From assembly GCF_006345805.1 (NCBI RefSeq), contig NW_021835991.1, positions 442,137 to 506,136 on the forward strand: DNA of 64,000 nt, written 5' to 3'. Positions 7,148-46,593 of the stretch are shown here, piece by piece. The translations under genes were made by a program, and so were the position numbers. Within the stretch, counting starts at the first letter, position 1. Every line of letters begins with the position of its first letter. The stretch is from Octopus sinensis (lineage: Eukaryota). The notes beneath the pieces were generated by a model. That model was not told the DNA's origin, ran no database searches, and saw nothing but the letters and a program-made list of their open reading frames with translations.

Positions 7148-8225
7148 CTCTAGATCCAATTTGCAGAAAGCGATTTTCGTAATCACGCGAAGTCTCATTC
7201 GTTATGTAGTAAGTAAGTGCAATATATGCAAGTTTGCTGCTCAAATAAAATAGTATAACGATTTGAGCTAAATTGTTGCTGATTTAGTTTAAAAAGATAT
7301 CAACTTGATCTATTTTATCTTAGAAAGTTAAAGTTCAACCTAACTTTATGCAAAAAAAAATTTCAGTCAATTCGTTTTAAACTGGATCAACTTCAGCTGA
7401 CCTCTTTAACTGTCACACAGCTGAGACTGACTCAAACCTCTCCAAATTCAATGGACAAGATTGCTCCTGAACAACGAATATTTATGTATTGGTATCAGTG
7501 TACGCATAGGTATGGATATCTGCCAGCCTCACACCTGCAGGTAGGAGAGCACAATTTTTTCGAACGGCTTGCATACCCTAGAAAGAGTGTTGGTGAGTAT
7601 TCCTCGCCACCCAGGTCGAGGAAAAGAAAAGGATAAAGTACAAAGACAATTCTGAACTTTCGAGTTCGATCCCCTGCTTTCGAAACCTTTGGAATCGTCT
7701 ACAAGATGACGACTCAGCTGCTATCGTTTGGAGCATCGAAGATCTTGCCGAAAAAAACGACCGGAGAGAGACGAGCTAGCTTTTTCAGCAAGTCTCGGTG
7801 TGCTCGCCGAAAATACCATTCCATACGCACTGCGGAGTCAAATAGCTAAGTCTTCGGGCCTCGACAAAGAATTTAAAGTGTAGTTGGTTGATTTACTTTT
7901 AATTTCTTTAAAGCTTTATTTTTCGCTACAAAAAGACTCAAGTTACTAATCTATTAAATCAATTTCAACAATTTTTAGATATAGAAACTATATGCGGTAC
8001 TTTTCGCAGGAGGGTGGGAGCTTTAGCCCCCTAGAATTCCCCCTTTTTACATTCCAAACTTAATTTGTTCTCAAAAAAAAAGTAAATAGTAATTTGAAAA
8101 AGTAGTAATCGATTGTCAACCACTGGCAGTCAGCATGGATGCGTGAACCACAAAAAACTGCAATTCCAATTTGTTTGTGAAGTCAGAAACCAACATCCAT
8201 CACGTATGTTAAACAAAAATAAAAA

Positions 8226-8367
8226 TGCGCAAGAGCACACGAAAAAAATACGCCGTAGGACAGCCCGACTGGAACCGACCTCACCCCATAGCGATCCAAA
8301 GTGCAATGGATGACTAAAGGATGGAATGCCTGCCTAAGTGATAACAAGCATCCACGACCAGGTAAGT
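8226..8367 (-). ncRNA. U1: U1 spliceosomal snRNA, copy 0
   Basis: Reverse strand starts ACTTACCTGG; SL1 loop ATCAC, SL2 loop ATTGCAC closed by ATCC/GGAT, SL3, helix H GTCG/CGGC, U-rich Sm site, short terminal hairpin. Confidence 0.93.
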
Positions 8368-8644
8368 GAATTTTTGAAATGGCACTCTCTAAATGTATTT
8401 AAAAAATCATTTAAATTATGTTCAATATTTCCACCGGATGAATTATTTTTATTCAATTAGAAAATTAATTTTGAGGTACGTTCTTTTTTAAATTTTAGAA
8501 AAAAACCATTACAAATTTATTATAATACTTTATTATTTTTATATTACATAAATATCAAATACGAAACAAACAGTTGATGATATAGAATACAGCTGATTGT
8601 TAGTGCTATTTTAAAAAAACAAAAAGTTTTTTAGAATGTATATA

Positions 8645-26427: not shown

Positions 26428-29400
26428 ATGACGGAAAGTACAAATGAGAGTTTACTGAGAATTATTCAAGATCATCAGTTAGTTTATGAAAAAGAAATAA
26501 ACAACTTAAAATACGATGAAAACAACTCAGAGGTTAATTTTCAATCATTTATTTCAAATAGAAAAACTACAATATATCAAGAATATAACAGAGATTTGAC
26601 TGATCAGAACAAATTACTCATTTCTTTATTATTTGATAAAAATGAAAATTCTGACATTGCAGTTCTATTTGAGCAAAATAAATCAAATGAACACAAAATT
26701 TTGTTTTTAGAAAAAGAGTATTCAGCACTTAAAGATATGTATGAACAAAAAATTGACCAAGTATTCATTTTATTTATTTCAAATAAATATATAGCAATAA
26801 TTATTTGGTGGGATTAGATCGATATTAATTAATATATGTACAATTATTAAATATAAACTAATATAAATAAGTTATTCAAAGTTAAATGTTTATTAATGAA
26901 TAGATAGTATCATTAAAAGAATATATCCGCCAAAAAGAAGAAGATTCCGAGCTGGAAAACCATCACAACAAACAATTTTCCCCAACAAGACAACAATCAA
27001 ATGACAATGAAACGGAAAACAAGAACCATACTATCCAACGTTGGCTTGAAAATGCAATTCTTGCCCAAAATGACCAACAGTCTTTTGAACAAATCCAACC
27101 AGACCAAACGGATGAACTACGAGCTCAGCTTTCTAAACAAATTGATGAGACAGCCTTCGTGCAATCGGCATTGGAGAGCAAAGAAAGTCTCATTCAAAGC
27201 TTGGAAGAAGATTTTTTTGGACTTAAAAAACACTGCGAGTTCCTTAAAGACCAACTTCAGTGTTTACAGATCTCTGAGGAAAAATTGTGCAGAGAAAATG
27301 CCTCATTAAGAGACCGACTGAGTTCGGAACAGTTAAAAGTATTTTTTCTAAAAAAAATTTAGGATGAATTTGAAAACTCTAAAGAGGTTTTTTAGTTAAT
27401 TAATAATTATTTTAAATTAATTATTAAATAAAATATTAGATTGCAGAAAGAGACGATGTGATACACAGATTATCCAATGAGTTGAACAGGACTCGACAGG
27501 GAATCAAGCAAATGAAAGGCAATATTGAACAAAGGGAAGAACAAATAAGAGAAATGAGAATTTCACACGATAAATTACAAGAAGAGAACTTAAAATTAGT
27601 TCAAGTTAAGTGTAATATCTATGATTTAGATCGATATGAACAATCAGGCTAAAATGGTAAAACAGGACGAATTCAGGTCACTACAAACAGATAATACTGT
27701 ATTGAGGCAGACTATAAGCAAACTTGTGGCTGATAACAGTAAATCGAGTTATCAGACACAAAAAGCCACTGAAGAATGTGAGTCATTGAATAATCGATGC
27801 TTATCACAAAAAGACCAAGTAAAGAATTGTGTTTAAAATATTTTATTAAAATTATATTTTTGTAAATTAAATATAAAATTAAAAAATATTATAGTTAAAA
27901 TTATTTAGATAAATGAAATGATTGAAAAAATCTCCAAAAGAGATTTAGAACTAAAGATACTAAAGGAAAAGCTCTCCAACATCAAACTGGAAGTAAAATT
28001 TAAAATATTCTAAATTTCCCAGTTAAAATTTCAAATTGACCAGAAAGACTCCATTGCTGTTGATCTGAAATCTTTCAAGTTACAAACGAACGAAATTAAC
28101 CTTGAAAACGAACGGAAAACTCACAGAGTGATTTCCCCGAATGCCTCATTTTAGATTGATCAATTGGAACAAGAATTGGACCACTATTCCAAAGAGAACG
28201 AAGTCAGTACTGAGCAGGTTACTGTTAGATATAGATTGGCAGATTTCATTATTGAACTCTCAATTAGAGGATTTTAGACGTAATGTAGAGCAGAATAAAG
28301 CTCAGGAAATGTCGGAAAGAAAAAAGCAGTTAGAATTCATATCAAGGCTGGAATCTGCTTTAGACGGTGCTCACTCCTCATTAAGAAATGAACGACAAAA
28401 TAACGAAAATAACAAGATTCTTATTTGTGATTTACAATCAGTTTTATTTGAAGAGAAAACAGAATCGGAAAGAAGATTTGAAGCAGTAATATTAAATTAA
28501 TTATTTTAGTTGACATATGCGAATGACAAGTTGAGAGATTATGAACTAAAGTTGTCTGAGAGCAAATCAAAGGAGGAATCAAGTTCTTCCAAGATTGAGG
28601 AGATGAATGATGAGATGGAACATATAATGGAAGACAGGAATAATTTACTTGAGAATTTTAACCAACAAATGGATAAAGTCATTTCTTTAGAGGAAATTGT
28701 GGCTTGTCAGAGCAGTGAGATCCAAAAAATCCAAACTGAAGTAACCAATTTGTATATTTTTAGAAATTTCGGATTTTAGTTGATTTAAGAGAAACTGAGG
28801 ATATTAATGAAGATCTTAAATTAGAAATTAATGAGATTGAGAAGAATTTTGAGGCATCACAACAAAGAATCGTATTATTAAGCCAACGTGAGAAAGAAAT
28901 GGTTGAAAACTACGAAGAAATGGCCGACAAGTTGGCACAAGCTCAGAAAGATTTGGAAAATGTTTATAAACAAGTAATAAATAAAATCAGGACATTGTAG
29001 CTCAAAGAAAGCGATTCGGAACTTGTTTGCGCAAAAACAGCTTTAAAAGACTACAAGTCTACCCATAAATTCTCAAATGAAGAACATGAACAACTCGTAG
29101 AAGACCTGAATGTCCAGAAACGAGAAATTCTGTTAGTTAAAAATAGTTTGGAAATGGCGGGAATTCAAAAAATACAACTTGAGGACCAATGTGCTTCATT
29201 AATAGCAAAAGTTATGTTTTAAAGTAGTAAAACCAGGGGGAAGAATCTGGAAGAAAGCTGGAACAACTCAAGTTAAAAGTTGATAAAATCGTCATTAAAA
29301 ACGCAAAAAAAGCTGAAAAGGCTGAAAATTTAATTAAAAAATTGAAACACGAAACATGTGAAAAAGCACAAAAAATACGAGAATTGGAGGGCGTGTTCGA

Positions 29401-30271
29401 ATCAAAAAGAATACTTATCGCTGAACTAGAACAGGCCTCCAAAACTGTCTCCGATCAAAAGTCACAATTGGAGTCTTTAGAGAATGAATTGGAGACATTG
29501 CGTCAAACCAAGGACTTTCTAGGAGGAGACATTGAGATTAAGAATGCTGAAGTATTTCCCGATATTCGATAATTTTAGATTCAAAATCTTAGAGACGGGC
29601 TGTCAACTACAAGGGCGGATTTTGAAAATTTAAAAATTTGTAACAAAAATCTGAAAGAACAAGTATTTTGTAAAAATTAAAAAAGTGCGAACGGTCAAAA
29701 GATCAAGTTGAATTACTTTCACGGCAAAATCGATCCACTGCTGATCAACTTGAGTCGAGTGTAGCTGATTATGTTAAAGCTCAACACATAATTTCCCGCC
29801 ATTTGAATGAATTATACACGTGTCGGTAATGAATTGAATAGTCTAATTAATGGCAGTGAAGAAGTAGAACTTGCAAGGGACGAGTCACGTGGATTACGTG
29901 TTCTCAATGAAGAATTGAGGTCGTCTGAGTTGAAAATTAAGCAAAAAAATTATAAACTTGAAAAGGAGCTTAAAATATTGAAAAAATTATTTACTTCAAC
30001 AGAACAAGATAGAACTGTGATTGAGAACCCTCAAAACTCAAGAAAAAATAGGGCAAAAATGTTAAATCCTGAATTGAATAAAACCACGTGTTTGGATCAG
30101 ATTAGAGTGATGCGAAATAATGATGGCGAGGAATTGAAGACCATCGTTGATATTCCGTTACAAAATGAAGACGAATCTTTGGTATTTATTTGTTTTTAAT
30201 TATTGATTTAGATTCAATATTGGAAGGATAGGTCAGTAGATTTGAATAAAAAGCTATCAAAATTGGAGTGA
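26428..30271 (+). CDS. Large coiled-coil protein, copy 2 (complete, roughly 1,100 aa)
   Basis: ATG 26428, first intron 26761-26903, then mostly 22-30-nt GT-AG introns with an open frame to TGA 30269-30271. Family not recognised. Confidence 0.85.
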
Positions 30272-30851
30272 TTCTTTATAATTTATTTTAAATAAATGAT
30301 TTTTTATTGGGATTATATTGAGATAGATCAGGGATCGGAAATCTATGGGGCTTCAGTTTCCATATTTTGTCTCTCAGTTGTCATGATGAAAAATATGGAA
30401 TGATTTCTTTCTTTTTCTTTAATGAATTCACTTGGTTGTACAATTTTCCGGTGTGTTTGTTGATCCGATTAAAATAATTTTGTAATTAACTTCTTTAAAT
30501 AGACACCACATCACAAATGATCACGACGCTTAAAATTGCGTCTCCAATAGAACAAACAGAATTTGTTGATTATAGTATCGTTGAGATGGATGAGGACCTA
30601 TCTATGAAGAAAAAACTCTGGATGATTATTTTTATTAATTTTTTTAATAATTCTAGAATTTCTTAACTCTTTTATAATTTTAAAACTTTAAATAAATTTC
30701 AATTAATGGTAAACAATTAGAGGTTCAAAACTTCTATTGCTCGCAAAATTCTGCATCTCGCCAGATTTCATTAAAAAAGTGCACATTTCCTAAAACTAAG
30801 TCGTATGATAAAATCGATTATATTACATCATAAAAGTTGAATTACAAAAAA

Positions 30852-31227
30852 TCATTTAAATTTTAGATTATTTTGATAGAATTCAATAACAAGCTGTGGA
30901 TTCGAAATCTTGAATTCAGATGCAGGGACCAGTGTGCGCTGATCTGATCCTTTCCTGGGAAACATTATCTTTAATTGCACAACCATGCAACAAGGAACAA
31001 CAATTCTCCTGTAAACATCGTGGCACCAATAATTTTTTTAGGTCTATTTTTTGGTTGGATGCTATTTTGATCATTTAAATTAATTTTCTTTGAGCTAGGT
31101 AGTTCACTAGAAATTATGTAAATTGTAAATTACATTATTTTTTTGGTCAAGGATTTTTTCTTATTTTGGCCATTCTTGATTTGAATTGAATTTTCTATAG
31201 AATTTTTCAAATAATAAAGCAACCCAT
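30852..31227 (-). CDS. HP1-like chromo-shadow-only protein, copy 2 (96 aa)
   Basis: Same three introns as copy 1; an in-frame 9-nt deletion and substitutions are confined to the linker. Confidence 0.8.
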
Positions 31228-31340
31228 TACAACAAAAATGTGATTTTGTCCTTTTATTACTTAATTTTTTATGGGTAAAAATAAAATCGTAATTATTTTA
31301 ATAATAAACTAAATTTATTAATATACAATTAAAATGATTT

Positions 31341-33662
31341 TAAAATTCGAATCCTCTCATGATGTGGACATTGCCTTAATACAGGAAACCGGCCTGACAT
31401 CGACACGTTCTACCCCTAGATTCAAGAGATTCTCAACCGTTCGTATGGACCGCCCTAATGGACTGAATTGAGGAGGTCTTATCACCCTCATCCGTGACAA
31501 CATTCCCTTCACTAACACTACCAATTCTATACGTTCCACATTTTTCCCAACGCCCACTTGGAGTTCGTCACAGTACTAATAACAATTAATTTCTTATTCT
31601 TAAAAAATATGAAAATCCAGACAATCCAATAGACAATCCCATTAAAATCAAACTAAATTAATAAATAATGAAAAAATAATTAAAATATATTTGTTTATAC
31701 GTCGAGATGTACATTCCTCCTCCTACAAATTGTTCGAAGGGCTACATTCCAGACCTCTCCTGTCTTGCCATTGAAGAACACATTGTGTGCACCTCTCGGA
31801 CATTCCTGATCGGTTCCTTAAGACCCTCCTTCTGATCACAACCCCGTAATTTTAGAGATAAAAAATACTTCCAAAGTCCTATTACCAAAAGGACATTTAT
31901 CAACTACAAACGCGGAGTGGAGTCGAAATTCCAACAAGAAACTGATCAGTATCTCTCAAACTTCTCAGTCCTAAATTTTAAATAAAAAACTTCAACAATT
32001 GCATAATCTCTGCAGACCGAAAATACATTCCCAAAGGATTCATCCGTGGGGCAAAACCACTTTTTACAAAGGAGATCATTGACCTCATAAAAGAGAGACG
32101 GGGAATAAAGAGGAATGGCGTCTGGGACTCCAACTCGGGCTCCTGATTATCAAGTATTAACGGGATAATCACTGACCACATTCTACAAAACAAAAGAGCC
32201 AGGTGGAAAGAGTTTGTATACACTGGATCATCGTACCGATTCAATTGAATTTTGGATTGAAATCTATTTTTTCCGGACAGACCTTACACATTTCCATTCA
32301 CGAATTTGGGATAAATAAACGTCTCCGCTCGAAGTCATTCCGAGAACAAGGGGATGACATTATGTCCCACTACAGCCCTACCTGTCAGATCAACATGGAC
32401 AGATCAAATCGTGTACGCACATTAAATCCCCCTCCGTCACCAAACGTCTCTCAGATCATGATAGACTGGTTGGACATACGTGCCCTAATCTTAATGCTAA
32501 GAATTCGCCGGCGAAACCCCTTGACGGAATATGCATTTATCATCTAAAAAACCTTGGGCCGAATGGTCTTCTAACCATCACGGACATTTTTCAAATTTCA
32601 TTGAATGTTGGATATGTCCCCATGTTATGGAAACAATCAACTATAATTCCAAAACTCAAGTCGAAAAGGATCCTCGGGACCCAGTTTCTTTCCGTCCATC
32701 TCCCTGCTTTATGTCGCTTCGAAAGTCTTGGAGAGATTCATTTTTAAACACACATCAACCTGTCTAGATCCCAACATGGTTTCCGCCCATCTCACTCCAC
32801 CTCTATTCATCTAACAAAACTAACGGACTTTATTGCGGATGGTTTTAACAACAAACCAGCACTTTTCACTATTCTGGATTCGATTGACATCTCCAAAGCT
32901 TCGGAATGTCCTCCGTGCAGTGTCCGGATCCTCCTTCGGTCAAGACTAAGAAACGCTAAGAATAATCTACAAATAATATGTCAGGACCTCCCTTAACTAC
33001 GCTAGCCCCGCTTGGGGCTCTTCTCTTTCATCCAGTAACAATCAAAAACTTCAAAGGATCTAAAATGGTGCTCTCTAAACAATTACTAGATGCATGCTAT
33101 TCACTCCTTCCGACCATCTCCAATGGGAAACCACCATTCTCCCTGTGGAAGATCACCTTCGCATGCGGAACCTGCAATTCCTCAGTACAGCCATGAATCA
33201 GACTACCTATGTCATTTCCTCTCTCATACAAAAAACAGCCGTATGATAGTACCTACCATTGCAAATCTAACCAGTGAACTGTCTAAAATTTCTGAGCCTT
33301 CCTCCGAGAAATCGAGGACAAAGCAGATACACGACCATGTCTCCATTAAGACTATTCGAAAACTTGCCTGGAATAAATTACTAGACGACTCCTTTCCTCT
33401 GGTGAACGACTCGGAGTCTTAGCTGGACAGAGAAACGAGAACATCTTTGGCACAACTTCGTTCTGGACATTTCCTCCTAATTGATGAATCTGGCTATTAG
33501 TCTCATCATCCGGGCCATCTATGCCTATTGCTTCGAGAAGCTTTCTCCGGACCGGGCCTCCGGTGGGCATTATAGACTTATGGAAGCGCCCAGCACTCGC
33601 TGCTGAGTGTCTAAGGACAGCCGGCCTCCTACAAGCTAGAGAGGTCGGAGTAACTAACTAAC
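31341..33662 (+). mobile_element. Degenerate APE-RT non-LTR retrotransposon (Jockey/I-like)
   Basis: DIALIQET and SDHNPVI (endonuclease), QHGFRPSHST, IDISKA, LNYASPAW, LAQLRSGH; RT core (QG, YADD) deleted at ~32905; (TAAC)3 tail. Confidence 0.85.
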
Positions 33663-33959
33663 TTACCTTGCAGGATTTCGAGAAAAATATTTTTGTAAGC
33701 ACTAGGTCTCACGAGTTTGTAAATATCAGCGAGAATCTTTGCTTATAGCGTCTATTAAGGTCACTGTTTAGCAGTGTTATTTGATTTAAATCATTTGATT
33801 TTAATCAACAAAAAATCAATGATTTGCTGCTGATTAAACCAATTGCTGTCGTTGTAGACAAAATGCAAAATGATTTTACGAAGATTAGTCATTTTGTAGA
33901 AAACTTGAACAGACTTACATGGATTATGAATGTACGGCTATTTTAGAAAAAATGAAAAC

Positions 33960-34900
33960 CTGAGCTGATCAAGTATTAACAGATTTCTTACTGGCAAATC
34001 TAATGGACCCAGCATGTTTTGAGAAGTCTCTTTCAACTGCAGAGATTGACCTCGCTTTGGAGTATTGTCTGAATATTATGAATATGCTCTCCCGAATCTG
34101 ATTAATTTCAGAGCTGAGCCATTTAAGCAATACAATATTCTAATAAAACTTGATGGTCATTAATCATTAGCCACTCACCACTCTGGACGTTGCCTATTCA
34201 TAAGTACAATTATTTCCATTAAGATGCTCAATTGCAAAATATGAAGATATTAAATTTATAAAGAATGAATAAAACTATTAACAAACTTATGATACTTTTA
34301 TTGAAATGGATAAATTGAAAAACCATCGACTTTGTCAGATTCATTTTTACAAATTGTAAAAAGTGTCAACCTTTACTCATAGTAGTTCTTTAAAATGTTT
34401 TTTCAATAATCGTTTTTCGGGCTCCGTAATTAGAAGTAAAATAATCATTGTTAATACACATATTGTCATATTTAGAATGTCATTATAATTCATCATTTTG
34501 TTAATATAAATTTGTCAATTCTAAATCATCCAGCAAATATGATAAGTGAATATTGTGATCTCCATTATGTTGTTTATTAAATAAACATTCTTTCGCTTTT
34601 TTAATAAGCAAAAAATCTCCTTTTAAAGAAATCCATACTTGAATAACATTTGACAGTTTGTAGCATAATAAGAAACAGATTTGAGTCAGCTCCCTAATCT
34701 CGCAGCTATTGGTTCTTGCGGGTACCCAATTTCTTTGAACAATTGTCTTCGATAATTGTTCTTTATAGCAAATGCTTGTAAAATTTCCACTATATTGTGG
34801 CAAGTAAACTCTGAAGGAGGTGGATGCCCAATAAATTCGAATAAGTGATAAATGCTCTTTTTCTCAATTTATAGAGTGGAATGTTTTCTGATACAAATGC
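33960..34900 (-). pseudogene. Degenerate hAT-like transposase (duplicate of 5320-6250; third copy ~43020-43960)
   Basis: Same motifs as copy 0. Confidence 0.45.
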
Positions 34901-35880
34901 TTCCGTTACGTCTGACGCAAAATTTCAGAAAAATAATTTTTCAGAACAATAGTCAATTGTCTTGTATTTGTGGATATTAAATTGTTGCTGATTTAGTTTA
35001 AAAAGATATCAACTTGATCTATTTTATCTTAGAAAGTTAAAGTTCAACCTAACTTTATGCAAAAAAATTTCAGTCAATTCGTTTTAAACTGGATCAACTT
35101 CAGCTGACCTCTTTAACTGTCACACAGCTGAGACTGACTCAAAGCTCTCCAAATTCAAGGGACAAGATTGCTCCTGAACGACAAATATTTATGTATTGGT
35201 ATTAGTTTACGCATAGGTATGGATATCTACCAGCCCCACACCTGCAGGTAGGGGAGCACAATTTTTTCGAACGGTTTGCATACCCTATCTTATAGAAAGA
35301 GTGCTGGTGAGTATTCCTCGCCACACACAAGTGAATAAGGTCGTTAAATGAGCTGATGCCCAGGTCGAGTAAAAGAAAAGGATAAAGTAAAAAAGACAAT
35401 TCTGAAACTTTCGAGTTCGACCCCTTGCTTCCGAAACTTTTGGAATAGTCGACAAGATGATGACTCAGCTGCTATCGTTTGGAGGATCGAAGATTTTGTC
35501 GAAAACAAATGACCGGAGAGAGACGAACTAGCTTTTCCAGCAAGTCTCGGTGTGCTCGCCGAAAATACCATTCCATACGCACTGCGGAGTCAAATAGCTT
35601 AGTCTTCGGGCCCCGAAAGACTTTAAAGTGCAGTTGGTTGATTTACTTTCAATTTTTTTAAAGCTTTATTTTTCGCTACTAAAAAAAACCTAAGTTACTA
35701 ATCTACTAAATCAATTTAAACAATTTTTAGATAAAGAAACTTTATCGCTTTAAAATGTAAATACTGAGTTGAAAAAGTAGTAATCAATTGTCAACAACCG
35801 GCAGTCAGTATTGCAGTCGTGATAACTGCAATTTCATTAGTATACCAATTAGTATGCATGGATTGGAACAAAAATAAAAA

Positions 35881-36023
35881 TGCACAAGAGCACACGAAAA
35901 AAAATATGCCGTAGGACAGCCCGACTGGAACCGACCTCACCCGATAGCGATCCAAAGTGCAATGGATGACTAAAGGATGGAATGCCTGCCTAAGTGATAA
36001 CAGGCATCCACGACCAGGTAAGT
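35881..36023 (-). ncRNA. U1: U1 spliceosomal snRNA, copy A
   Basis: ACTTACCTGG-TCG-TGGATGCCTG-TTATCACTTAGG-CAGGCATTCCA-...-ATCC-ATTGCACTTT-GGAT-...-CGGC-ATATTTTTTTTCG-TGTGC-TCTT-GTGCA; all U1 helices fold by eye. Confidence 0.95.
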
Positions 36024-36195
36024 GGATTTTTGAAATGGCACTCTCTAAATGTATTTAAAAAATCATTTAAATTATGTTCAATATTTCCACCGGATGAATT
36101 ATTTTTATTCAATTAGAAAATTAATTTTGAAATAAGTTCTTTTTTAAATTTTAGAAAAAAACCATTACAAATTTATTTAATACTTTATTATTTTT

Positions 36196-37413
36196 ATGTT
36201 ACATAAATATCAAATACGAAACAAACAAGTGGACAACTATCTATCCCCGAGTCATAGTGGATTTAGGACAGGAAGATCCACCGCCGATGCTGTCTGGGCC
36301 CACAAGTGGTACTGCGCTATCACCCAGAGATACAAAAGTGCAACAACAGTCCTGGGAATAGACCTGTCTAGGGCCTTTGACACGGTACGCCGTGGTCTAC
36401 TCCTCAAAATACTGGAACAATTCCTGGACCCTGACTCTGTCAATATGATAAGAGTACTACTATCGAACACAAAGCTCAAGGTGCGGGTCGGCACGGCGTT
36501 TTCCCGTGAATTCACGTGCAACGTCGGTACCCCTCAGGGAGACGCCCTCTCGCCGTTGCTATTCGTGATCTATCTGGAGACGGCACTACGAGACCTTCGA
36601 AAATTCTATGCTGGCAATATCGTCGAAATTGTATATGCAGATGACGTCGACTTCGTGTCAGACGACAAATCGGCCTTACTTCGACTCCTTGAAGTGGCAC
36701 CTGCTGAGCTGAACAGATGGTTCCTTAAAATGAACGTTGGAAAAACCGACATCGTTGAAATCATGAGGATGGAGAGCAGCTCAAGTGAAGCCTGGCGCAA
36801 AACGAACAAACTTGGTTCTCTACTTGGGGACGGCCATGATATTGTCAGAAGAAAGGCTCTCGCTTGGGCCACGATGAACAAGATAAAGAAAGAGTGGATC
36901 GGCAAACGACGACTCTGTACGTCACTTCGTCTGAGGATGTATGAAGCCTTTGTCAAACCAATCCTGACATATAATTCGGCGACCTGGGGAATGTCTAGTA
37001 CTGAACAACGTGGACTCGATTCTTTTCACCGCAGGCAACTTAGATCCCTACTGGGATTGAACTGGCCTATAAGAATCAACCAGGAATCGCTATACAATAG
37101 ATGCAGAACTGGCCCTCTGAGTGTGGAAATCGTCAATATGCGGTGGAGGTTATTTGGCCATATTCTACGAATGGACATGCTTGCCCCAGCTAACATAGCA
37201 ATGGAGGGCTACTTCCTGAAAGAGGGATCGAGCTTCCGTGGACGTCCACGTGTTACGCTGCCGGAAACACTTGACGGAGACCTGAAATGTGTGAAGAAAA
37301 GGCTAAGGAGTGGTGAGGATCTGGACGAGCTGAGGAAACTCGCTCACGACAGAGGAGGTTGGAGGAGGCTGGTTCAAAGGATTGTTTTTAATGCTGCACG
37401 AGTAAAATTATAA
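36196..37413 (+). CDS. Reverse transcriptase ORF (405 aa) of an RTE-type element; lacks endonuclease and the first RT motifs
   Basis: SGFRTGRST, GIDLSRAFD, GTPQGDALSPLLF, YADD, LKMNVGKT, thumb RWRLFGHILR, RGRP; the ATG lies in flanking DNA. Confidence 0.85.
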   Translation: MLHKYQIRNKQVDNYLSPSHSGFRTGRSTADAVWAHKWYCAITQRYKSATTVLGIDLSRAFDTVRRGLLLKILEQFLDPDSVNMIRVLLSNTKLKVRVGTAFSREFTCNVGTPQGDALSPLLFVIYLETALRDLRKFYAGNIVEIVYADDVDFVSDDKSALLRLLEVAPAELNRWFLKMNVGKTDIVEIMRMESSSSEAWRKTNKLGSLLGDGHDIVRRKALAWATMNKIKKEWIGKRRLCTSLRLRMYEAFVKPILTYNSATWGMSSTEQRGLDSFHRRQLRSLLGLNWPIRINQESLYNRCRTGPLSVEIVNMRWRLFGHILRMDMLAPANIAMEGYFLKEGSSFRGRPRVTLPETLDGDLKCVKKRLRSGEDLDELRKLAHDRGGWRRLVQRIVFNAARVKL

Positions 37414-37453
37414 CTAATATGATTCTACGTATGTTGCAAATAATAATAATAAT
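36228..37453 (+). mobile_element. 5'-truncated RTE-type non-LTR retrotransposon, copy A
   Basis: 9-bp TSD AAACAAACA (36219-36227, 37454-37462), (TAA)n tail, very short 3' UTR; empty site at 8564-8572. Confidence 0.92.
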
Positions 37454-37534
37454 AAACAAACAGTTGATGATATAGAATACAGCTGACCGTTAATGCTACT
37501 TTAAAAAACAAAAAGTTTTTTTAGAATGGATATA

Positions 37535-38744
37535 CACTCAACCCTCTCAAATTGGCCATTTTTGGTTCCTTCAATATTGTTGGCCAATTTGAGAAATGGC
37601 CAATTAGCAAATAAAACTAGTGTCTGTGATGGAGACTCGCTAGAGAGAATACTAAATAACTCACTTGATAGGTTTGGATAAATTATTCTATATGTATATT
37701 TAAATATTTCGAATTATTAGAGATCTTTATAGCTGTGATAACTTTCGTTACGTGAATGTAGATGCTTTTGCACGTCTAGTCGCATTAACACATCAGTACA
37801 AATCTTATTCTAACATTAAAGTTACATGCAATCAAATACCATTTTTATTCGCCAAAAATCAGTCGTCGCCTCAACCTTAAATATTTTAAATTACTGACTG
37901 TGTAGTTTTTTTAAAGACCAGAAAATGTGCATGTTCACAAATGGGTCCTAACCCACAATGTATACTTTTTTATTCTCATATAAGAATTACAACAGTGACG
38001 AAAAAACTAAATATCTTATTAGCCGACAACAGTGTGAAAATAAAAGTATCTCAAATGCAACCTCTGTGACCACCCTATCCCAAATAATATAATCTGCACA
38101 AGTGAATGTAACTGAAAAAATATTTTGACGGTACTCAATAACTAACCTAATTATTCTGATATTTCTTGTTTTCACTTTTCTTTATTATTACATTCACTAG
38201 TCAGAATTAAATCCAAACTTGCACAATTTTTTATTGATTTAATTAAAAGAAAAACCAAATTTTAACAAAAACCAGTCCCAAAATTAGTTACAGATATGTA
38301 TTTTGATGTCTGGGTCAAATGAAGAATAGTAAATCTCTTTATAAGGATTATTCACCAGTTTAAAATCATCCATAATAAAAATAGACTTGATTAATGACAT
38401 TCTGATTGTTTGTAACAACCTTCACAGTAACCTCACACAACTTGAAAATTGCTTCTTCAAAATGGATACGCTAAATTTTGAGGATTGCGATCAAACCGAA
38501 TAACTTTCTTCTTTTTACGGAATAATTCCAGAATCAGAAAGTTTTCTAGAATGTATTATCAATAATTTAACTTGTCTGCGAAAATTAATAAAATTAAAAT
38601 TTATTAAAAAAATTTTGAAAAATAAAAATTATGCTACTAAAAAAATTAAAATTTGTGGCCAATTTGAAAATTTATTATTTTGTAGAGTTTTTCAATTTTC
38701 CAGAAATAAATTGTCAAAAATGGCCAATTTGAGAGGGTTGAGTG
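37535..38744. mobile_element. Tc1/mariner-like TIR element, copy A
   Basis: Same TIR and TA flanks as 8645-9853. Confidence 0.7.
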
Positions 38745-40092
38745 TAACTTTATTATTAATGCGTCCACTTTCAGTTGATTTTCCTCTTCCTTGAACCACA
38801 ACCGATCTCTTTAAAGGTCCCATTCATTTATCTCACAGGGTTTGGTTCTTCTGTGGTCATTCTCAAGTTTGACTCGATGGCCTCACATGGAAATGCTTTC
38901 TCCGTTGATTCATTTGTAAACCGAGACTTTTTCCATTCTTTTAAATTAATGCTCTACACGCATAGTCTACAAAGTTTTTCATAAATGAATGCAAGCTTGT
39001 GTGGGTCCTTCGAGATTGATTGAATAGCAGTGATGTTCATAGAATTTTCACACAACACCGTTTCATATTTGTACCAATAATACGTAGTTGCCTTGGCATT
39101 GTAGATTACTCTCAGTTCATTAGCAAGCATGTCGAATTTATAAGCTTTTCTGACAAGATTTTCATTAAAATGATTTTCTTAACCTTCACTCAATCATATC
39201 ATATCTTCACCCTAATTCCTGCCATATCCTAACCTCAACCACTTACTAATCCAAACCATATACTAGTCCTAACCACTTCCAAACTTTACCCCTAATTTTA
39301 ACCGTAATTCTATCTATTAAGCTGTATTAAAATATCAGAGATTTAACCTCATTTTGTAGTTTATTTAACCATACAAATCATTGTAAACATATACATATTT
39401 TGTAATTATTAAAAAAGTAAACACAGCATGTTAAAAGTTAAAAAAAAGAATTGTTAGCCCGAAATTATTTTACGAGCCTATGTTTAGTTCAGGTGTAATC
39501 AGGTCTTGACAGTTGAAATTTATGGCTATTATATATAAATAATGTTTGGGATAATCGAAAAATTTTATTTGCACGTTTACAAGGTCAAAAAATGTAACAA
39601 GCTGCCCATGTCACATGAACACTTGTTTGCGGCTAGATAAATTCGAGTTTATAATTAACATTTTATCAAATAATCGTGTCAAAATAAAGCAAGCATTCTT
39701 ATTTATTAGTTACGCAGGTAAATTAGAGTTTCAAAGTACAATGTAACCGGTTGCCTATCCGTATTCGTCTGCCCATATTATATAATAAATTCTTGAAATA
39801 ACTCAAAGCAGTAAAACATTGAGGGCAGTTTGGTTAAATTAGCTTTTTTATATCAAGAGAACTGAGTAAGGAATTCTGTAGTATTGCAAAATCGAATTTA
39901 TACTTAGAATATATTCTTTTTTATTTTTATTCTTCTCAGCATTCTTTGACGAACTATAACATTTAGTAATTTTTGAGAATGTTAATGATGAGATGTCATT
40001 TTTTTGACAATGATTTAAAAATATTAATCACTTGACATTTGTTAAAATCGGGAATTAATTGGCGAAAATTTGATTTTTCAGATTATCTAGGG

Positions 40093-40538
40093 CAGGATTC
40101 GGAAAATACTTTCGGAAAAGTGCCATTTTTGAACATTTTTGGAAATTTCGAAAAATTGAAGAGCCTTTTTTTACCATTTGTCCAAATCAAAAATTCAAAT
40201 TCATAAAATTAATTAGACATTCATTTAAAAAAATAAAATTAATTAGACTCATTAATGGAAAATGTGATTCCTTATTTCTTTGGTGAGTTATCAATTATTA
40301 ATAAAGAAAAAATTAACAAAAAAAATTAAAAATGAAAGAGCCATTTTTAACCGAAGCTTGAGATACATGCTATTTCGTATGAGCAAAATTTACGACTAAA
40401 TATGTAAACTTTTAAATAATTTTACAAAAATCATATATAAAAACAAATAAATAGTTATAAAAATAATAAAATTGAAAGAGCCTACTTAAGACTTAAAGAG
40501 CCAACAAAAGCTTGCGAGCCCACTTTTGCCGACCCCTG
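40093..40538. mobile_element. hAT MITE, copy A
   Basis: TSD ATCTAGGG both sides; right TIR ttgccgacccctg; left TIR decayed (caggattcgg). Confidence 0.85.
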
Positions 40539-40606
40539 ATCTAGGGGATTTAATATTTTGTTTTGGTTGGATTAACGAGACAAGCGAATGTTAATAAAAG
40601 TTAATA

Positions 40607-41958
40607 TTAGTCGGCCAATTGGCAAAATAGAGCTGCCCCTCGCTGTATCCAGTGACTGTCCTTTTGGTCAGTGGGAAGGTTGACTGCCACAATAAAGTTA
40701 GTAGAATGACCTATCGTTCTAGAATAAATATAAACCAGTAGTTGAGAGGACTCCTGACCTCTGCGTGGTTTTATAGAGAGGGGCTATGTAATCGTGGCTT
40801 GGAGGAGTGAAATTCTGTGTGGGTAAGACGTGGATGACAGGCATAATGGAGGACATTTCCCTGTAGTTCATCTCGTCCATTTGACCCTGGTCACTCCATC
40901 GGAAGCCTTGGGTGTAAAGTCCGTGAATGAGAGCGCCGTCTTCAATGTCTTGAATCTATGGAGTAGTGACTAAGACTAACTTGAGTATCGACTGACAATG
41001 GTTGGCCAAATTTGCGAGTCCTGATCTCTTCTGCGAGGTTTGATTGGTGGATGTATTGGGGAAGAGGTTGGAAACTAAAGGAAAGAGTGTCAATGGGGAG
41101 TTGATATTTGCGGGAATAGTTCTGTAACACGGCAGTGAGGAAGCTTGATAGAGTGAGTTGTGTCAACCTTGGGGGAAGAACAAGGCAGGTATCCAAAAAA
41201 ATTTAGGAGTGCCATTTTTAATCCAAAAATTGAAGAATTCACATCGCATTGTAAGATCGAGAATCCAGGAAGAGAGAGAGTGAAGGGAAGGGTAAGCGAC
41301 CCTCTCCCATATTGAGGGGACCTGTTTCATGAAGGACTGATAATTGCCTGGTTTTTCAATAGAGAATTGTAGCACATTTCCAAGTCTTCAGTGAGGACTT
41401 GGAATCCTTGGATTGCTCTCTGCAAGTGATTGAGGGACTTCTGAAAATGATGAGATCATCAGACCTGAATAGTTTCCAGCAGATAAGCCATTTTTTCTAT
41501 TTCTTGTGATAAGAAAATAGCGAGGGAATTGCTCTTGGTCTATTGGATGAGTGGATTGGTCAACCAATGTGTATTCTGCTAGTTTTAGGGGCAATTGTTG
41601 TTGAATTGAGTTGATTAATTCCTCTACGATCTCGTCACTAGTTTGCCCAGTTCCTTTGACCGCGATGTGTGGTTTAATGTTCCTGATGGTCTCTAGCAAG
41701 TCAGAGGATTGTGACAACTATCGACTGAGGGTGAAAACATACTTGGAATGATATATTTGCATTTTCGTGCATCCCGAATATATTAGGTGAATCTTGCAAA
41801 GGCAGTCCGTCTAGAAAATGTTTGTTCTCTTTAAAAATAGGGTCATATTGCCCATTAATGTTCGTATCTTCGAGAATTTGTTGGTTGATAAATCGGTCGA
41901 GAATAACTCCCAGACAGCGCAGATCCCATTGATCAGTGACTCTCCCCCCATAAGTAAT
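40607..41958 (-). pseudogene. Duplicated 3' end of the DNAH6-type dynein gene
   Basis: Starts at ITYGGRVTDQWDLRCL after a 6-nt intron remnant; acceptor mutation at 41145, -1 at 40780-40782, PKS to PKF at ~41199. Confidence 0.85.
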
Positions 41959-41964
41959 CTAGTG

Positions 41965-42718
41965 TCCTCCGTGCAGTGTCCGGATCCTCCTTCGGTCAAG
42001 ACTAAGAAACGCTAAGAATAATCTACAAATAATATGTCAGGACCTCCCTTAACTACGCTAGCCCCGCTTGGGGCTCTTCTCTTTCATCCAGTAACAATCA
42101 AAAACTTCAAAGGATTCAAAATGGTGCTCTCTAAACAATTACTAGATGCATGCTATTCACTCCTTCCGACCATCTCCAATGGGAAACCACCATTCTCCCT
42201 GTGGAAGATCACCTTCGCATGCGGAACCTGCAATTCCTCAGTACAGCCATGAATCAGACTACCTATGTCATTTCCTCTCTCATACAAAAAACAGCCGTAT
42301 GATAGTACCTACCATTGCAAATCTAACCAGTGAACTGTCTAAAATTTCTGAGCCTTCCTCCGAGAAATCGAGGACAAAGCAGATACACGACCATGTCTCC
42401 ATTAAGACTATTCGAAAACTTGCCTGGAATAAATTACTAGACGACTCCTTTCCTCTGGTGAACGACTCGGAGTCTTAGCTGGACAGAGAAACGAGAACAT
42501 CTTTGGCACAACTTCGTTCTGGACATTTCCTCCTAATTGATGAATCTGGCTATTAGTCTCATCATCCGGGCCATCTATGCCTATTGCTTCGAGAAGCTTT
42601 CTCCGGACCGGGCCTCCGGTGGGCATTATAGACTTATGGAAGCGCCCAGCACTCGCTGCTGAGTGTCTAAGGACAGCCGGCCTCCTACAAGCTAGAGAGG
42701 TCGGAGTAACTAACTAAC
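41965..42718 (+). mobile_element. 3' part of the Jockey/I-like LINE, unit B copy
   Basis: Matches 32909-33662 including the (TAAC)3 tail. Confidence 0.85.
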
Positions 42719-44936
42719 TTACCTTGCAGGATTTCGAGAAAAATATTTTTGTAAGCACTAGGTCTCACGAGTTTGTAAATATCAGCGAGAATCTTTGCTT
42801 ATAGCGTCTATTAAGGTCACTGTTTAGCAGTGTTATTTGATTTAAATCATTTGATTTTAATCAACAAAAAATCAATGATTTGCTGCTGATTAAACCAATT
42901 GCTGTCGTTGTAGACAAAATGCAAAATGATTTTACGAAGATTAGTCATTTTGTAGAAAACTTGAACAGACTTACATGGATTATGAATGTACGGCTATTTT
43001 AGAAAAAATGAAAACCTGAGCTGACCAAGTATTAACAGATTTCTTACTGGCAAATCTAATGGACCCAGCATGTTTTGAGAAGTCTCTTTCAACTGCAGAG
43101 ATTGACCTCGCTTTGGAGTATTGTCTGAATATTATGAATATGCTCTCCCGAATCTGATTAATTTCAGAGCTGAGCCATTTAAGCAATACAATATTTTAAT
43201 AAAAGTTGATGGTCATTAATCATTAGCCACTCACCACTCTGGACGTTGCCTATTCATAAGTACAATTATTTCCATTAAGATGCTCAATTGCAAAATATGA
43301 AGATATTAAATTTATAAAGAATGAATAAAACTATTAACAAACTTATGATACTTTTATTGAAATGGATAAATTGAAAAACCATCGACTTTGTCAGATTCAT
43401 TTTTACAAATTGTAAAAAGTGTCAACCTTTACTCATAGTAGTTCTTTAAAATGTTTTTTCAATAATCGTTTTTCGGGCTCCGTAATTAGAAGTAAAATAA
43501 TCATTGTTAATACACATATTGTCATATTTAGAATGTCATTATAATTCATCATTTTGTTAATATAAAATTTGTCAATTCTAAATCATCCAGCAAATATGAT
43601 AAGTGAATATTGTGATCTCCATTATGTTGTTTATTAAATAAACATTCTTTCGCTTTTTTAATAAGCAAAAAATCTCCTTTTAAAGAAATCCATACTTGAA
43701 TAACATTTGACAGTTTGTAGCATAATAAGAAACAGATTTGAGTCAGCTCCCTAATCTCGCAGCTATTGGTTCTTGCGGGTACCCAATTTCTTTGAACAAT
43801 TGTCTTCGATAATTGTTCTTTATAGCAAATGCTTGTAAAATTTCCACTATATTGTGGCAAGTAAACTCTGAAGGAGGTGGATGCCCAATAAATTCGAATA
43901 AGTGATAAATGCTCTTTTTCTCAATTTATAGAGTGGAATGTTTTCTGATACAAATGCTTCCGTTACGTCTGACGCAAAATTTCAGAAAAATAATTTTTCA
44001 GAACAATAGTCAATTGTCTTGTATTTGTGGATATTAAATTGTTGCTGATTTAGTTTAAAAAGATATCAACTTGATCTATTTTATCTTAGAAAGTTAAAGT
44101 TCAACCTAACTTTATGCAAAAAAAATTTCAGTCAATTCGTTTTAAACTGGATCAACTTCAGCTGACCTCTTTAACTGTCACACAGCTGAGACTGACTCAA
44201 AGCTCTCCAAATTCAAGGGACAAGATTGCTCCTGAACGACAAATATTTATGTATTGGTATTAGTTTACGCATAGGTATGGATATCTACCAGCCCCACACC
44301 TGCAGGTAGGGGAGCACAATTTTTTCGAACGGTTTGCATACCCTATCTTATAGAAAGAGTGCTGGTGAGTATTCCTCGCCACACACAAGTGAATAAGGTC
44401 GTTAAATGAGCTGATGCCCAGGTCGAGTAAAAGAAAAGGATAAAGTAAAAAAGACAATTCTGAAACTTTCGAGTTCGACCCCTTGCTTCCGAAACTTTTG
44501 GAATAGTCGACAAGATGATGACTCAGCTGCTATCGTTTGGAGGATCGAAGATTTTGTCGAAAACAAATGACCGGAGAGAGACGAACTAGCTTTTCCAGCA
44601 AGTCTCGGTGTGCTCGCCGAAAATACCATTCCATACGCACTGCGGAGTCAAATAGCTTAGTCTTCGGGCCCGAAAGACTTTAAAGTGCAGTTGGTTGATT
44701 TACTTTCAATTTTTTTAAAGCTTTATTTTTCGCTACTAAAAAATCCTAAGTTACTAATCTACTAAATCAATTTAAACAATTTTTAGATAAAGAAACTTTA
44801 TCGCTTTAAAATGTAAATACTGAGTTGAAAAAGTAGTAATCAATTGTCAACAACCGGCAGTCAGTATTGCAGTCGTGATAACTGCAATTTCATTAGTATA
44901 CCAATTAGTATGCATGGATTGGAACAAAAATAAAAA

Positions 44937-45078
44937 TGCACAAGAGCACACGAAAAAAATATGCCGTAGGACAGCCCGACTGGAACCGACCTCACCCGAT
45001 AGCGATCCAAAGTGCAATGGATGACTAAAGGATGGAATGCCTGCCTAAGTGATAACAGGCATCCACGACCAGGTAAGT
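44937..45078 (-). ncRNA. U1: U1 spliceosomal snRNA, copy B
   Basis: Same as copy A except one fewer U in the Sm-site run. Confidence 0.95.
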
Positions 45079-45250
45079 GGATTTTTGAAATGGCACTCTC
45101 TAAATGTATTTAAAAAATCATTTAAATTATGTTCAATATTTCCACCGGATGAATTATTTTTATTCAATTAGAAAATTAATTTTGAAATAAGTTCTTTTTT
45201 AAATTTTAGAAAAAAACCATTACAAATTTATTTAATACTTTATTATTTTT

Positions 45251-46511: not shown

Positions 46512-46593
46512 AAACAAACAGTTGATGATATAGAATACAGCTGACCGTTAATGCTACTTTAAAAAAACAAAAAGTTTTTTTAGAATGGATATA

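What the first reader, a model, noticed from the sequence alone, without database searches (positions are those of the whole stretch)
35881..36023. Minimal, divergent U1 snRNA in a genome of 20-30-nt introns
About 142 nt. The 5' recognition end (ACUUACCUG) and the U1A loop (AUUGCAC) are canonical. The U1-70K loop reads UAUCACUUAG instead of GAUCACGAAG, the Sm site is AU7-8CG rather than AUUUGUG, and SL4 is only a 5-6-bp hairpin (UGUGC-UCUU-GUGCA) with no UUCG loop. In humans SL4 contacts SF3A1 to bridge U1 and U2 across introns. Its reduction may reflect a remodelled spliceosome for introns too short for normal U1/U2 co-occupancy (inference). Copy 0 differences keep pairing (e.g. G-U to G-C in SL4).
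Basis: partly seen in the sequence, partly recalled or inferred. Interest (0 to 1): 0.7.

Follow-up and report, generated by a model that had tools for sequence, protein, structure and literature searches.

The report
Short-tailed U1 snRNA genes, tiny-intron animal
This is a genuine U1 spliceosomal RNA gene, one of three near-identical copies in the window, from an animal whose introns are only 20-27 bases long (most likely a dicyemid); it keeps every canonical U1 part but has an unusually short, weak 3' hairpin, and whether that relates to the tiny introns is untested.

Summary
On the minus strand at 35878-36025 lies a full-length match to Rfam U1 (RF00003): 61.6 bits, E 8e-15, below the 69.5-bit gathering score. 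Two more copies lie at 8224-8369 and 44935-45080.

The sequence folds unaided into the canonical U1 shape. Fifteen of 39 base pairs show changes on both sides relative to canonical U1s, which argues against a decayed pseudogene.

- the 5' ACUUACCUG;
- the AUUGCAC loop;
- the SL1 loop UAUCACUUAG;
- an AU7-8CG Sm-like site;
- a 6-bp SL4 with a UCUU loop (-4 to -7 kcal/mol, against -15 for canonical).

The host really has tiny introns. A DNAH6-like dynein gene in the window has 24 modelled introns of 20-27 nt. The host is most likely a dicyemid.

"Minimal" is overstated: all four stem-loops and helix H are present, and the RNA is about 144-148 nt against 164. The CACUUAG change in the SL1 loop also occurs in otherwise canonical U1 genes from metagenomes (139-145 bits). 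S. pombe also has a shorter SL4 stem.

The link between a short SL4 and short introns is inference from one lineage. Expression, RNA ends and the absence of a canonical U1 elsewhere could not be tested. No dicyemid U1 was found in the searched literature.

The parts
35878..36025 (-). U1 snRNA gene, copy B (the finding). The RNA probably runs from about 36023-36027 to about 35878-35880.
   Evidence: RF00003 61.6 bits, E 8.1e-15, model positions 1-166. Cloverleaf minimum-free-energy fold, z -4.4.
36015..36023 (-). 5' splice-site recognition sequence ACUUACCUG, single-stranded
   Evidence: Exact match; unpaired in the fold.
35980..36009 (-). Stem-loop 1: 10-11 bp, with the U1-70K-type loop UAUCACUUAG at 35990-35999
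   Evidence: Six of its 11 pairs change on both sides relative to canonical U1s.
35938..35979 (-). Stem-loop 2, with the canonical U1A/SNF loop AUUGCAC at 35957-35963
35913..35937 (-). Stem-loop 3: 9 bp with a 5-nt loop
35908..35912 (-). 3' strand of helix H (ACGGC). It pairs with GUCGU at 36010-36014 and closes the four-way junction.
35895..35905 (-). Sm-like site A-U8-CG (U7 in copies A and C), at the canonical position between helix H and SL4
   Evidence: Aligned to CAUAAUUUgUGg of the Rfam consensus. Run length seen.
35880..35895 (-). Truncated stem-loop 4, GUGUGC-UCUU-GUGCAU: 6 bp with only 2 G-C pairs (3 in copy A)
   Evidence: dG is -4.2 (copy A -6.8), against -15 kcal/mol for canonical SL4. 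Twelve consensus SL4 positions are deleted in the Rfam alignment.
35867..35879 (-). U-rich 3' flank (UUUUAUUUUUGUU), the last stretch conserved between copies. It is a candidate 3'-end signal. It also contains a second Sm-like AUUUUUG.
   Evidence: Close identity between copies A and B stops here. The next ~95 nt are strongly diverged.
36024..36227 (-). 5' flank of about 205 nt, shared by all three copies; presumed promoter. It holds a TATA-like TTTAAATA at 36052-36059 (-36 to -29) and a G+C-rich box CATCCGGTGG at 36087-36096 (-73 to -64).
   Evidence: The box occurs only at the three U1 copies. Function is not tested.
8224..8369 (-). U1 snRNA gene, copy A: 5 substitutions and 1 U-run length difference relative to copy B
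   Evidence: RF00003 62.2 bits. Alignment; fold.
44935..45080 (-). U1 snRNA gene, copy C. It is identical to copy B except for U7 instead of U8 in the Sm-like run.
   Evidence: RF00003 62.6 bits. It lies in the 99.2% tandem duplication 32907-41838 = 41963-50883.

Best explanation
These are genuine U1 spliceosomal snRNA genes. At least three copies were spread by segmental and tandem duplication. The host is an animal with 20-27-nt introns, most likely a dicyemid mesozoan.

Inferred from established U1 biology, the RNA would:
- be transcribed by RNA polymerase II from the shared ~205-nt upstream region;
- fold into the standard four-way junction;
- bind U1-70K on SL1, U1A/SNF on the AUUGCAC loop of SL2, and an Sm ring on the U-rich tract;
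- pair its invariant ACUUACCUG with 5' splice sites, which here keep only weak complementarity.

Compared with canonical animal U1, the stems have drifted heavily but with compensation. SL1 and SL3 are slightly trimmed. SL4 is cut to a weak 6-bp hairpin that lacks the G+C-rich stem and the UUCG loop.

The short SL4 probably cannot make the human-type contact with the SF3A1 UBL/RGG tail. The evidence cannot say whether that loss is an adaptation to tiny introns or just lineage-specific reductive drift in a fast-evolving parasite. I consider drift, or co-evolution with a changed partner, the default.
For: - Full-length RF00003 match in three copies, E 1e-13 to 1e-15.
- The unaided minimum-free-energy fold is the U1 cloverleaf, z about -4.3 to -4.4.
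- On an alignment with human U1 and three canonical metagenome U1s, 86% of cells pair, against 34-50% when partners are slid. Fifteen of 39 pairs carry changes on both sides. This is the signature of long-term structural constraint, not pseudogene decay.
- The 5' end and the U1A loop are exact.
- All three stem-associated differences between copies keep or add pairing.
- The gene plus 5' flank stays 97% identical between copies A and B, while the DNA just 3' of it is scrambled.
- Host inference. The DNAH6-like gene has 24 introns of 20-27 nt. It uses the standard code. The best named homologues are from molluscs and a flatworm. The window GC, LINE and repeat load match Dicyema japonicum. Among animals only dicyemids and myxobolid myxozoans have introns under 30 nt (PMC13644364). 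That myxozoans lack cilia is my own background knowledge.
Against: - The score is below Rfam's gathering threshold.
- There is no expression, cap or end-mapping data.
- The three copies are too alike to show selection: divergence inside the gene equals that of the flanks.
- The copies sit in repeat-rich DNA next to a LINE fragment and a satellite.
- The rest of the genome could not be searched for a more canonical U1.
- The Sm-like site (AU7-8CG) lacks the usual G straight after the U run.
- The structure used for pair counting was derived from one of the window copies, which favours it (the caveat stated).
Confidence: 0.8

Rival explanations
1. Adaptive remodelling. SL4 was reduced because introns of about 24 nt cannot hold U1 and U2 snRNPs in the usual cross-intron arrangement. 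The SL4-SF3A1 bridge was therefore lost or rewired. This extends the best explanation rather than replacing it.
For: - SL4 lacks the GCG/CGC upper stem and the G+C-rich lower stem that SF3A1 binding and U1 function need in human cells (PMC8833184; PMC4233244).
- dG is -4 to -7, against -15 kcal/mol for canonical SL4.
- The introns really are 20-27 nt.
- The 5' splice sites are weak, averaging 5.2 of 9 matches to CAG|GUAAGU.
Against: - There is one lineage and no comparison.
- The authors who surveyed Stentor (15-16-nt introns) describe its U1 as similar to other eukaryotes (PMC9505925).
- S. pombe has a shorter SL4 stem without having ultra-short introns, and its SL4 still works in human chimeras.
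- Dicyemid SF3A1 and U1-70K could not be inspected.
Confidence: 0.2
2. These are silent or minor variant U1 copies (pseudogene-like) carried along in duplicated repeat-rich DNA. The working U1 of this genome is a canonical gene elsewhere.
For: - Sub-threshold Rfam score.
- Copy divergence equals flank divergence.
- A LINE fragment sits 205 nt upstream of copies B and C.
- Animals often carry many U1 variants and pseudogenes (PMC10870369, abstract listed).
Against: - Heavy but compensated stem divergence from canonical U1.
- Perfect 5' end and U1A loop.
- A spontaneous cloverleaf fold.
- These are not what a decaying copy of a canonical gene would show. A retroposed pseudogene would not share 205 nt of upstream sequence.
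- No other U1 type is present in the 64 kb.
Confidence: 0.1
3. The mature RNA is longer at the 3' end. The small hairpin would be internal, the true Sm site would be the AUUUUUG just downstream of it (inside 35867-35879), and a further 3' hairpin would follow.
For: - An exact AUUUUUG lies 10 nt after the hairpin and is conserved in all copies.
- Each copy can form some hairpin further downstream.
Against: - The downstream hairpins of copies A and B are made from non-homologous, strongly diverged sequence.
- The extended fold of copy A is no better than shuffles, z -1.0.
- The U-rich tract at 35895-35905 sits exactly where Rfam's consensus places the Sm site, directly after the conserved GCAUA.
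Confidence: 0.06

Closest known systems
Canonical metazoan U1 snRNA (Rfam RF00003; human U1, 164 nt)
   Same: - 5' ACUUACCUG.
- Helix H plus the SL1-SL3 four-way junction.
- The AUCAC..AG core of the SL1 loop.
- The AUUGCAC loop of SL2.
- A U-rich Sm site after GCAUA.
- A terminal hairpin.
   Different: - About 144-148 nt long.
- Scores 62 bits, against 139-145 for canonical genes.
- SL1 loop has G28U, G34U and A35U.
- Sm-like site is AU7-8CG.
- SL4 is 6 bp with a UCUU loop and 2-3 G-C pairs, instead of about 10 bp with an internal loop and UUCG.
- The two bases before ACUUACCUG are CC or UC, not AU.
U1 genes on metagenome contigs L021, L049 and L114 (organism unknown; tandem repeats, one linked to 5S rRNA)
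   Same: The same SL1 loop change, GAUCACUUAG in place of GAUCACGAAG.
   Different: They are otherwise fully canonical: 164 nt, 139-145 bits, with the vertebrate-like G+C-rich SL4 and a UUCG or UACG loop. So the loop change and the SL4 reduction are independent.
Schizosaccharomyces pombe U1 snRNA
   Same: A shorter SL4 stem than in animals (PMC4233244). From my own memory, not checked here: it is about 148 nt long and starts directly at ACUUACCUG.
   Different: The S. pombe SL4 has a larger loop, and its lower stem is still G+C-rich. It complements human U1 function in chimeras. The window's SL4 is not G+C-rich.
Saccharomyces cerevisiae U1 snRNA
   Same: It lacks a structure equivalent to human SL4 downstream of the Sm ring (PMC8833184). 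This shows the SL4-SF3A1 contact is not universal.
   Different: It is 568 nt long with many extra proteins, the opposite of a reduced RNA.
Stentor coeruleus U1 snRNA (15-16-nt introns)
   Same: A host with ultra-short introns. ACUUACCU is conserved (PMC9505925).
   Different: Its authors report it as similar to other eukaryotic U1s.
Human variant U1 (vU1) genes and U1 pseudogenes
   Same: Multi-copy, with sequence variants in duplicated DNA.
   Different: The window copies differ from canonical U1 by compensated stem changes throughout, not by scattered uncompensated mutations. They also share promoter-region sequence.

Membership tests
U1 spliceosomal snRNA (RF00003) | Single-stranded 5' ACUUACCUG complementary to the 5' splice site | tested here: met
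   Exact at 36023-36015 and in both other copies; unpaired in the fold.
U1 spliceosomal snRNA (RF00003) | Four-way junction: helix H closing SL1, SL2 and SL3 | tested here: met
   The minimum-free-energy fold gives it unaided. 86% of cells pair, and 15 of 39 pairs change on both sides relative to canonical U1s.
U1 spliceosomal snRNA (RF00003) | SL1 apical 10-nt loop carrying the U1-70K recognition sequence (GAUCACGAAG) | tested here: inconclusive
   - Seven of 10 bases are identical (UAUCACUUAG).
- A29, U30, C31, A32, C33, A36 and G37 are kept.
- G28, G34 and A35, which contact U1-70K or stack in the human structure (PMC4383343), are changed.
- The G34U/A35U pair also occurs in canonical U1s.
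- Binding was not tested.
U1 spliceosomal snRNA (RF00003) | SL2 loop AUUGCAC (U1A/SNF site) | tested here: met
   Exact at 35963-35957.
U1 spliceosomal snRNA (RF00003) | Sm site (A-U3-6-G-purine type) between helix H and the 3' hairpin | tested here: inconclusive
   The position is right and the tract is U-rich, but it reads AU7-8CG, with no G directly after the U run.
U1 spliceosomal snRNA (RF00003) | 3'-terminal SL4 of about 10 bp with a G+C-rich stem | tested here: not met
   A hairpin is present, but it has only 6 bp, 2-3 G-C pairs and dG -4.2 to -6.8, against -15. SL4 is not universal in the family, being shorter in S. pombe and absent in S. cerevisiae. I therefore treat this as a variant trait, not an exclusion.
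U1 spliceosomal snRNA (RF00003) | Score at or above Rfam's curated gathering threshold (69.5 bits) | tested here: not met
   61.6, 62.2 and 62.6 bits. The E-values (1e-13 to 1e-15) and the full-length alignment are far beyond chance. This is an operational cut-off, not a biological feature.
U1 spliceosomal snRNA (RF00003) | Expressed, trimethylguanosine-capped, assembled into a snRNP, and needed for splicing | not testable with these tools
   No RNA data. The organism's contigs and proteins are not in the searchable collections.
Pol II snRNA gene (animal type) | Proximal sequence element near -55, and a 3' box 9-19 nt after the RNA end | tested here: inconclusive
   Candidates exist: CATCCGGTGG at -73 to -64, TATA-like at -36 to -29, and a conserved U-rich 13 nt after SL4. 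The copies are too similar for footprinting, and no other snRNA gene in the window shares the box.

The most novel reading that the evidence does not exclude
In dicyemids, and perhaps convergently in myxobolid myxozoans, the cross-intron U1-U2 bridge made by U1 SL4 and the SF3A1 ubiquitin-like domain has been lost or replaced. Introns of about 24 nt would leave no room for the standard prespliceosome. The truncated, G+C-poor SL4 would be the RNA-side trace of that rewired early spliceosome.
Probability: 0.15. Interest if true: 0.7.

Novelty: new member of a known kind. Interest (0 to 1): 0.4.

Why it matters
How a multi-megadalton spliceosome handles introns shorter than 30 nt in animals is an open question. 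The recent literature has looked at U2 and U2AF in myxozoans (PMC13644364) and at Stentor proteins (PMC9505925). I found no paper that holds both 'Dicyema' and 'U1 snRNA'.

This window gives the sequence of a probable dicyemid U1. The 5' splice-site reader and the U1A site are untouched. SL4, the one element known to contact U2 snRNP, is reduced to a weak hairpin lacking the bases human SF3A1 reads.

That turns a vague idea into a concrete test, using SL4 swap assays, SF3A1-UBL binding and comparison with myxobolids and orthonectids. If the SL4 change is mere drift, the finding is an ordinary housekeeping gene in a little-studied phylum. It would still be useful for annotation, because Rfam's default threshold misses it.

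Tried and rejected
- **Rfam at gathering thresholds** found nothing in the window. Only the E-value mode showed the U1s.
- **Weak Rfam hits beside the gene** (RAGATH-25 at E 0.056; trypanosomatid LSU at E 9) were dismissed as chance in AT-rich DNA.
- **tRNA scan** found none.
- **The bacterial-type promoter/terminator scan** is not informative for a eukaryotic gene. Its only 'terminator' is helix H plus the Sm U-run.
- **The look-up of encoding contigs** with the LINE RT ORF, meant to identify the organism and find more U1-bearing contigs, returned nothing on record. The protein search gave no hit above 67% identity, so the organism's own proteome is not in the collection. U1-70K and SF3A1 therefore could not be inspected.
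- **The metagenome pattern scan** (ACTTACCTG..ATCACTTAG) returned at least 120 loci. Nearly all are chance matches. Only L021, L049 and L114 are true U1 genes.
- **The first greedy intron finder** made errors, giving some introns of 40-60 nt. It was replaced by homology-checked introns and a small dynamic-programming gene model.
  - That model's length prior favours about 24 nt.
  - It still missed one in-frame intron.
  - It has at least one local frame error.
- **Ciliate origin** was considered and rejected. The window uses the standard genetic code and carries LINE, hAT and Helitron-like elements. Its DNAH6 orthologue is closest to animal sequences.
- **Pol III transcription** was considered, because of the TATA-like box and a T5 run after SL4. 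I rejected it because the internal U7-8 run would terminate Pol III (inference).
- **A longer SL4 using downstream sequence** was rejected, because copies A and B are not alike there.

Full report
**What is there**

The feature lies on the minus strand. Rfam at gathering thresholds reports nothing in the 64 kb. At E-value thresholds the U1 model RF00003 matches 35878-36025(-) end to end, over model positions 1-166, at 61.6 bits and E 8.1e-15. Two more copies lie at 8224-8369(-) and 44935-45080(-), at 62.2 and 62.6 bits. All three are below the 69.5-bit gathering score. ACTTACCTG occurs five times against 0.34 expected, and three of those are these genes.

**Anatomy of copy B** (numbered from the A of ACUUACCUG at 36023)

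- ACUUACCUG is single-stranded, at 36023-36015.
- Helix H is GUCGU/ACGGC.
- SL1 has 10-11 bp and the loop UAUCACUUAG (35999-35990).
- SL2 carries an exact AUUGCAC (35963-35957).
- SL3 has 9 bp.
- A U-rich tract, A-U8-CG (35905-35895), directly follows the conserved GCAUA.
- SL4 is GUGUGC-UCUU-GUGCAU (35895-35880).

The unaided minimum-free-energy fold is this canonical cloverleaf plus a 3' hairpin. It comes to -52.5 kcal/mol with z -4.4, and 0 of 200 shuffles fold as well. Copy A behaves the same way.

**Is it a working-type U1 or a decayed copy?**

I then counted pairs for helix H and SL1-SL3.

- 86% of cells form standard pairs, against 34-50% when the 3' partners are slid by 1-3 columns.
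- Fifteen of 39 pairs carry changes on both sides. Examples are A-U to C-G and G-C to C-G in helix H, four such pairs in SL1, three in SL2 and two in SL3.
- The structure was derived from a window copy, which favours it. Even so, heavy and compensated divergence is what long-term structural constraint produces, and pseudogene decay does not.

Between the copies themselves there is little to learn. B and C differ only in the U-run length (8 against 7). A differs from B by five substitutions and that indel. The three changes in or beside stems keep or add pairing. However, the overall 3% divergence equals that of the surrounding duplicated DNA.

**Genomic setting**

- Copies B and C lie in a 9,056-bp tandem duplication, 32907-41838 = 41963-50883, at 99.2% identity.
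- Copy A lies in an older duplication of about 27.8 kb, 1-10915 against 27793-39789, at 91-97% identity.
- In B and C a 1.2-kb 5'-truncated reverse-transcriptase fragment (36196-37413; Pfam RVT_1) sits about 205 nt upstream of the gene. Copy A lacks it, and A/B homology resumes beyond it.
- The gene plus the 205-nt 5' flank is 97% identical between A and B. Directly after ...GCAUUUUUAUUUUUGUU (35867) the two copies are scrambled for about 95 nt before homology returns.
- So no conserved sequence is available to lengthen SL4, and the downstream hairpins that each copy can form are not homologous.
- The 5' flank holds a TATA-like TTTAAATA at -36 to -29 and a G+C-rich box CATCCGGTGG at -73 to -64. 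The box occurs nowhere else in the window. Their function is untested.

**The host and its introns**

From about 62.6 to 50.5 kb on the minus strand lies an axonemal dynein heavy-chain gene. Its best solved relatives are mammalian DNAH6.

- Removing seven GT..AG segments of 25, 22, 23, 27, 24, 25 and 24 nt gives a product that aligns with a Biomphalaria DNAH6-like protein over 323 residues without a gap.
- A small dynamic-programming model over 61175-54780 predicts 24 introns of 20-27 nt, median 24.
- Its 1,942-residue product aligns in a single stretch with DNAH6 residues 593-2563.
- The model has a length prior and a few local errors.
- The 5' splice sites are weak: on average 5.2 of 9 positions match CAG|GUAAGU, with only faint preferences beyond GU.

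The organism is most likely a dicyemid. The window uses the standard genetic code and carries LINE, PIF1/Helitron-like and hAT remnants. The best named homologues come from molluscs and a flatworm. The GC content and repeat load match Dicyema japonicum, which has 36.7% GC, 49% repeats and LINE expansion (PMC6736024). Dicyema sp. has a median intron of 27 bp (PMC6543705). Among 51 animal genomes only dicyemids and myxobolid myxozoans have introns under 30 bp (PMC13644364). From my own background knowledge, myxozoans lack cilia and so would not be expected to keep an axonemal dynein. This identification is an inference. The organism's own sequences are not in the searchable collections.

**How unusual is this U1?**

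Canonical U1 genes scored the same way reach 139-145 bits, so this RNA is truly divergent. 'Minimal' is too strong, however: every canonical element is present, and about 16-20 nt are missing.

*SL1 loop.* In the human structure:
- C31 and A32 stack on the RNP phenylalanines;
- C33 and G34 are clasped by loop 3;
- A29 and A36 pair;
- G28 flips out onto Tyr112 (PMC4383343).

Here A29-C33, A36 and G37 are kept, and G28, G34 and A35 are changed. A metagenome scan showed that the G34U/A35U version (GAUCACUUAG) also occurs in otherwise fully canonical 164-nt U1 genes that have the vertebrate-like SL4 (L021, L049, L114). That loop change is therefore tolerated elsewhere and is unrelated to SL4 reduction. 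Only G28U is private to this U1.

*SL4.* This is the real outlier.
- It has 6 bp with 2-3 G-C pairs and a UCUU loop. Its dG is -4.2 to -6.8, against -15 kcal/mol for canonical SL4.
- Human SF3A1-UBL reads the GCG/CGC upper stem through its RGG tail. Swapping those pairs abolishes binding, while changing the tetraloop matters little (PMC8833184).
- The G+C-rich lower stem is needed for function and is G+C-rich in human, fly, worm and S. pombe. The S. pombe stem is shorter, yet its SL4 works in human chimeras (PMC4233244).
- S. cerevisiae has no SL4 equivalent downstream of the Sm ring.
- A human-type SF3A1 contact is thus unlikely here. Shortening as such has precedent.

**Does the short SL4 reflect the short introns?**

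This remains inference. In favour: the introns are far shorter than the span normally occupied by U1 and U2 together, and SL4 is the only U1 element known to touch U2 snRNP. Against: it is one lineage. The authors who surveyed Stentor, with 15-16-nt introns, describe its U1 as similar to other eukaryotes (PMC9505925). Dicyemids are also fast-evolving parasites in which drift is expected. I put the adaptive reading at about 0.15-0.2.

**Other rivals**

- Silent variant copies with a canonical U1 elsewhere: about 0.1. This cannot be excluded from one window.
- A 3'-extended RNA that uses the downstream AUUUUUG as its Sm site: about 0.06. It is disfavoured because the downstream sequence is not conserved between copies.

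**Novelty and verdict**

No paper in the library holds both 'Dicyema' and 'U1 snRNA', and the two dicyemid genome papers do not mention snRNAs. This is a new member of a known family with a noteworthy SL4. It is useful for annotation, because default Rfam thresholds miss it. It also gives a concrete handle for testing how early spliceosome assembly copes with introns under 30 nt. Interest is moderate.

Noticed in passing
window 32907-41838 and 41963-50883; also 1-10915 against 27793-39789: There is a 9,056-bp tandem duplication at 99.2% identity. There is also an older duplication of about 27.8 kb at 91-97% identity with several indels. Each repeat unit carries one U1 gene, so the U1 family here grew by segmental duplication.
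   Followed up: partly
window 36196-37413 (+) and 45251-46468 (+): Two identical 405-aa ORFs carry a reverse-transcriptase domain (RVT_1, E 4e-28). They are a 5'-truncated non-LTR element inserted about 205 nt upstream of U1 copies B and C, head to head with the gene, and are absent from copy A. The insertion therefore falls between the two duplication events.
   Followed up: partly
window 10983-11611 and 13222-19286: A 93-95-bp satellite, with 6.7 copies in one block and 63.8 copies in the other, in opposite orientation. The larger array also shows a 286-bp higher-order period. The two blocks flank a PIF1-like helicase remnant at 11706-12410 (-), possibly Helitron-derived. The 149-aa 'ORF' at 18817-19266 is just the satellite read through.
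   Followed up: partly
window ~50500-62600 (-): An axonemal dynein heavy chain 6 (DNAH6) orthologue with 20-27-nt introns. At least two introns (57855-57829, 27 nt; 57556-57533, 24 nt) are in frame and free of stop codons. They read through as part of a 281-aa ORF and would be missed by ORF-based annotation.
   Followed up: yes
window 59982-59990 (minus strand reads CAGGTAAGT): A perfect 9/9 match to the U1-complementary 5' splice-site consensus lies inside a conserved dynein exon (codons ..ITGKYW..). It is apparently not used as a splice site, while the real introns nearby average only about 5/9 matches. Complementarity to U1 alone therefore does not define introns here.
   Followed up: partly
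window 23278-23643 (-): A 121-aa ORF with a weak match to the hAT transposase dimerisation domain (E 0.008, below the Pfam cut-off). It is probably a DNA-transposon remnant.
   Followed up: no
L021 7-170 and 962-1082; L049 988-1153 and 1-147; L114 1533-1697 and 6-124: Metagenome contigs carrying canonical U1 genes in tandem arrays of about 955-1,000 bp. In L114 the U1 gene lies next to a 5S rRNA gene on the opposite strand. All have the GAUCACUUAG SL1 loop. The source organisms are unknown.
   Followed up: partly
window 2016-2408 (+) and 29807-30199 (+): Two near-identical 130-aa ORFs (MNYTRVGNEL...) in the older duplication have no Pfam match. It is unknown whether they are genes.
   Followed up: no
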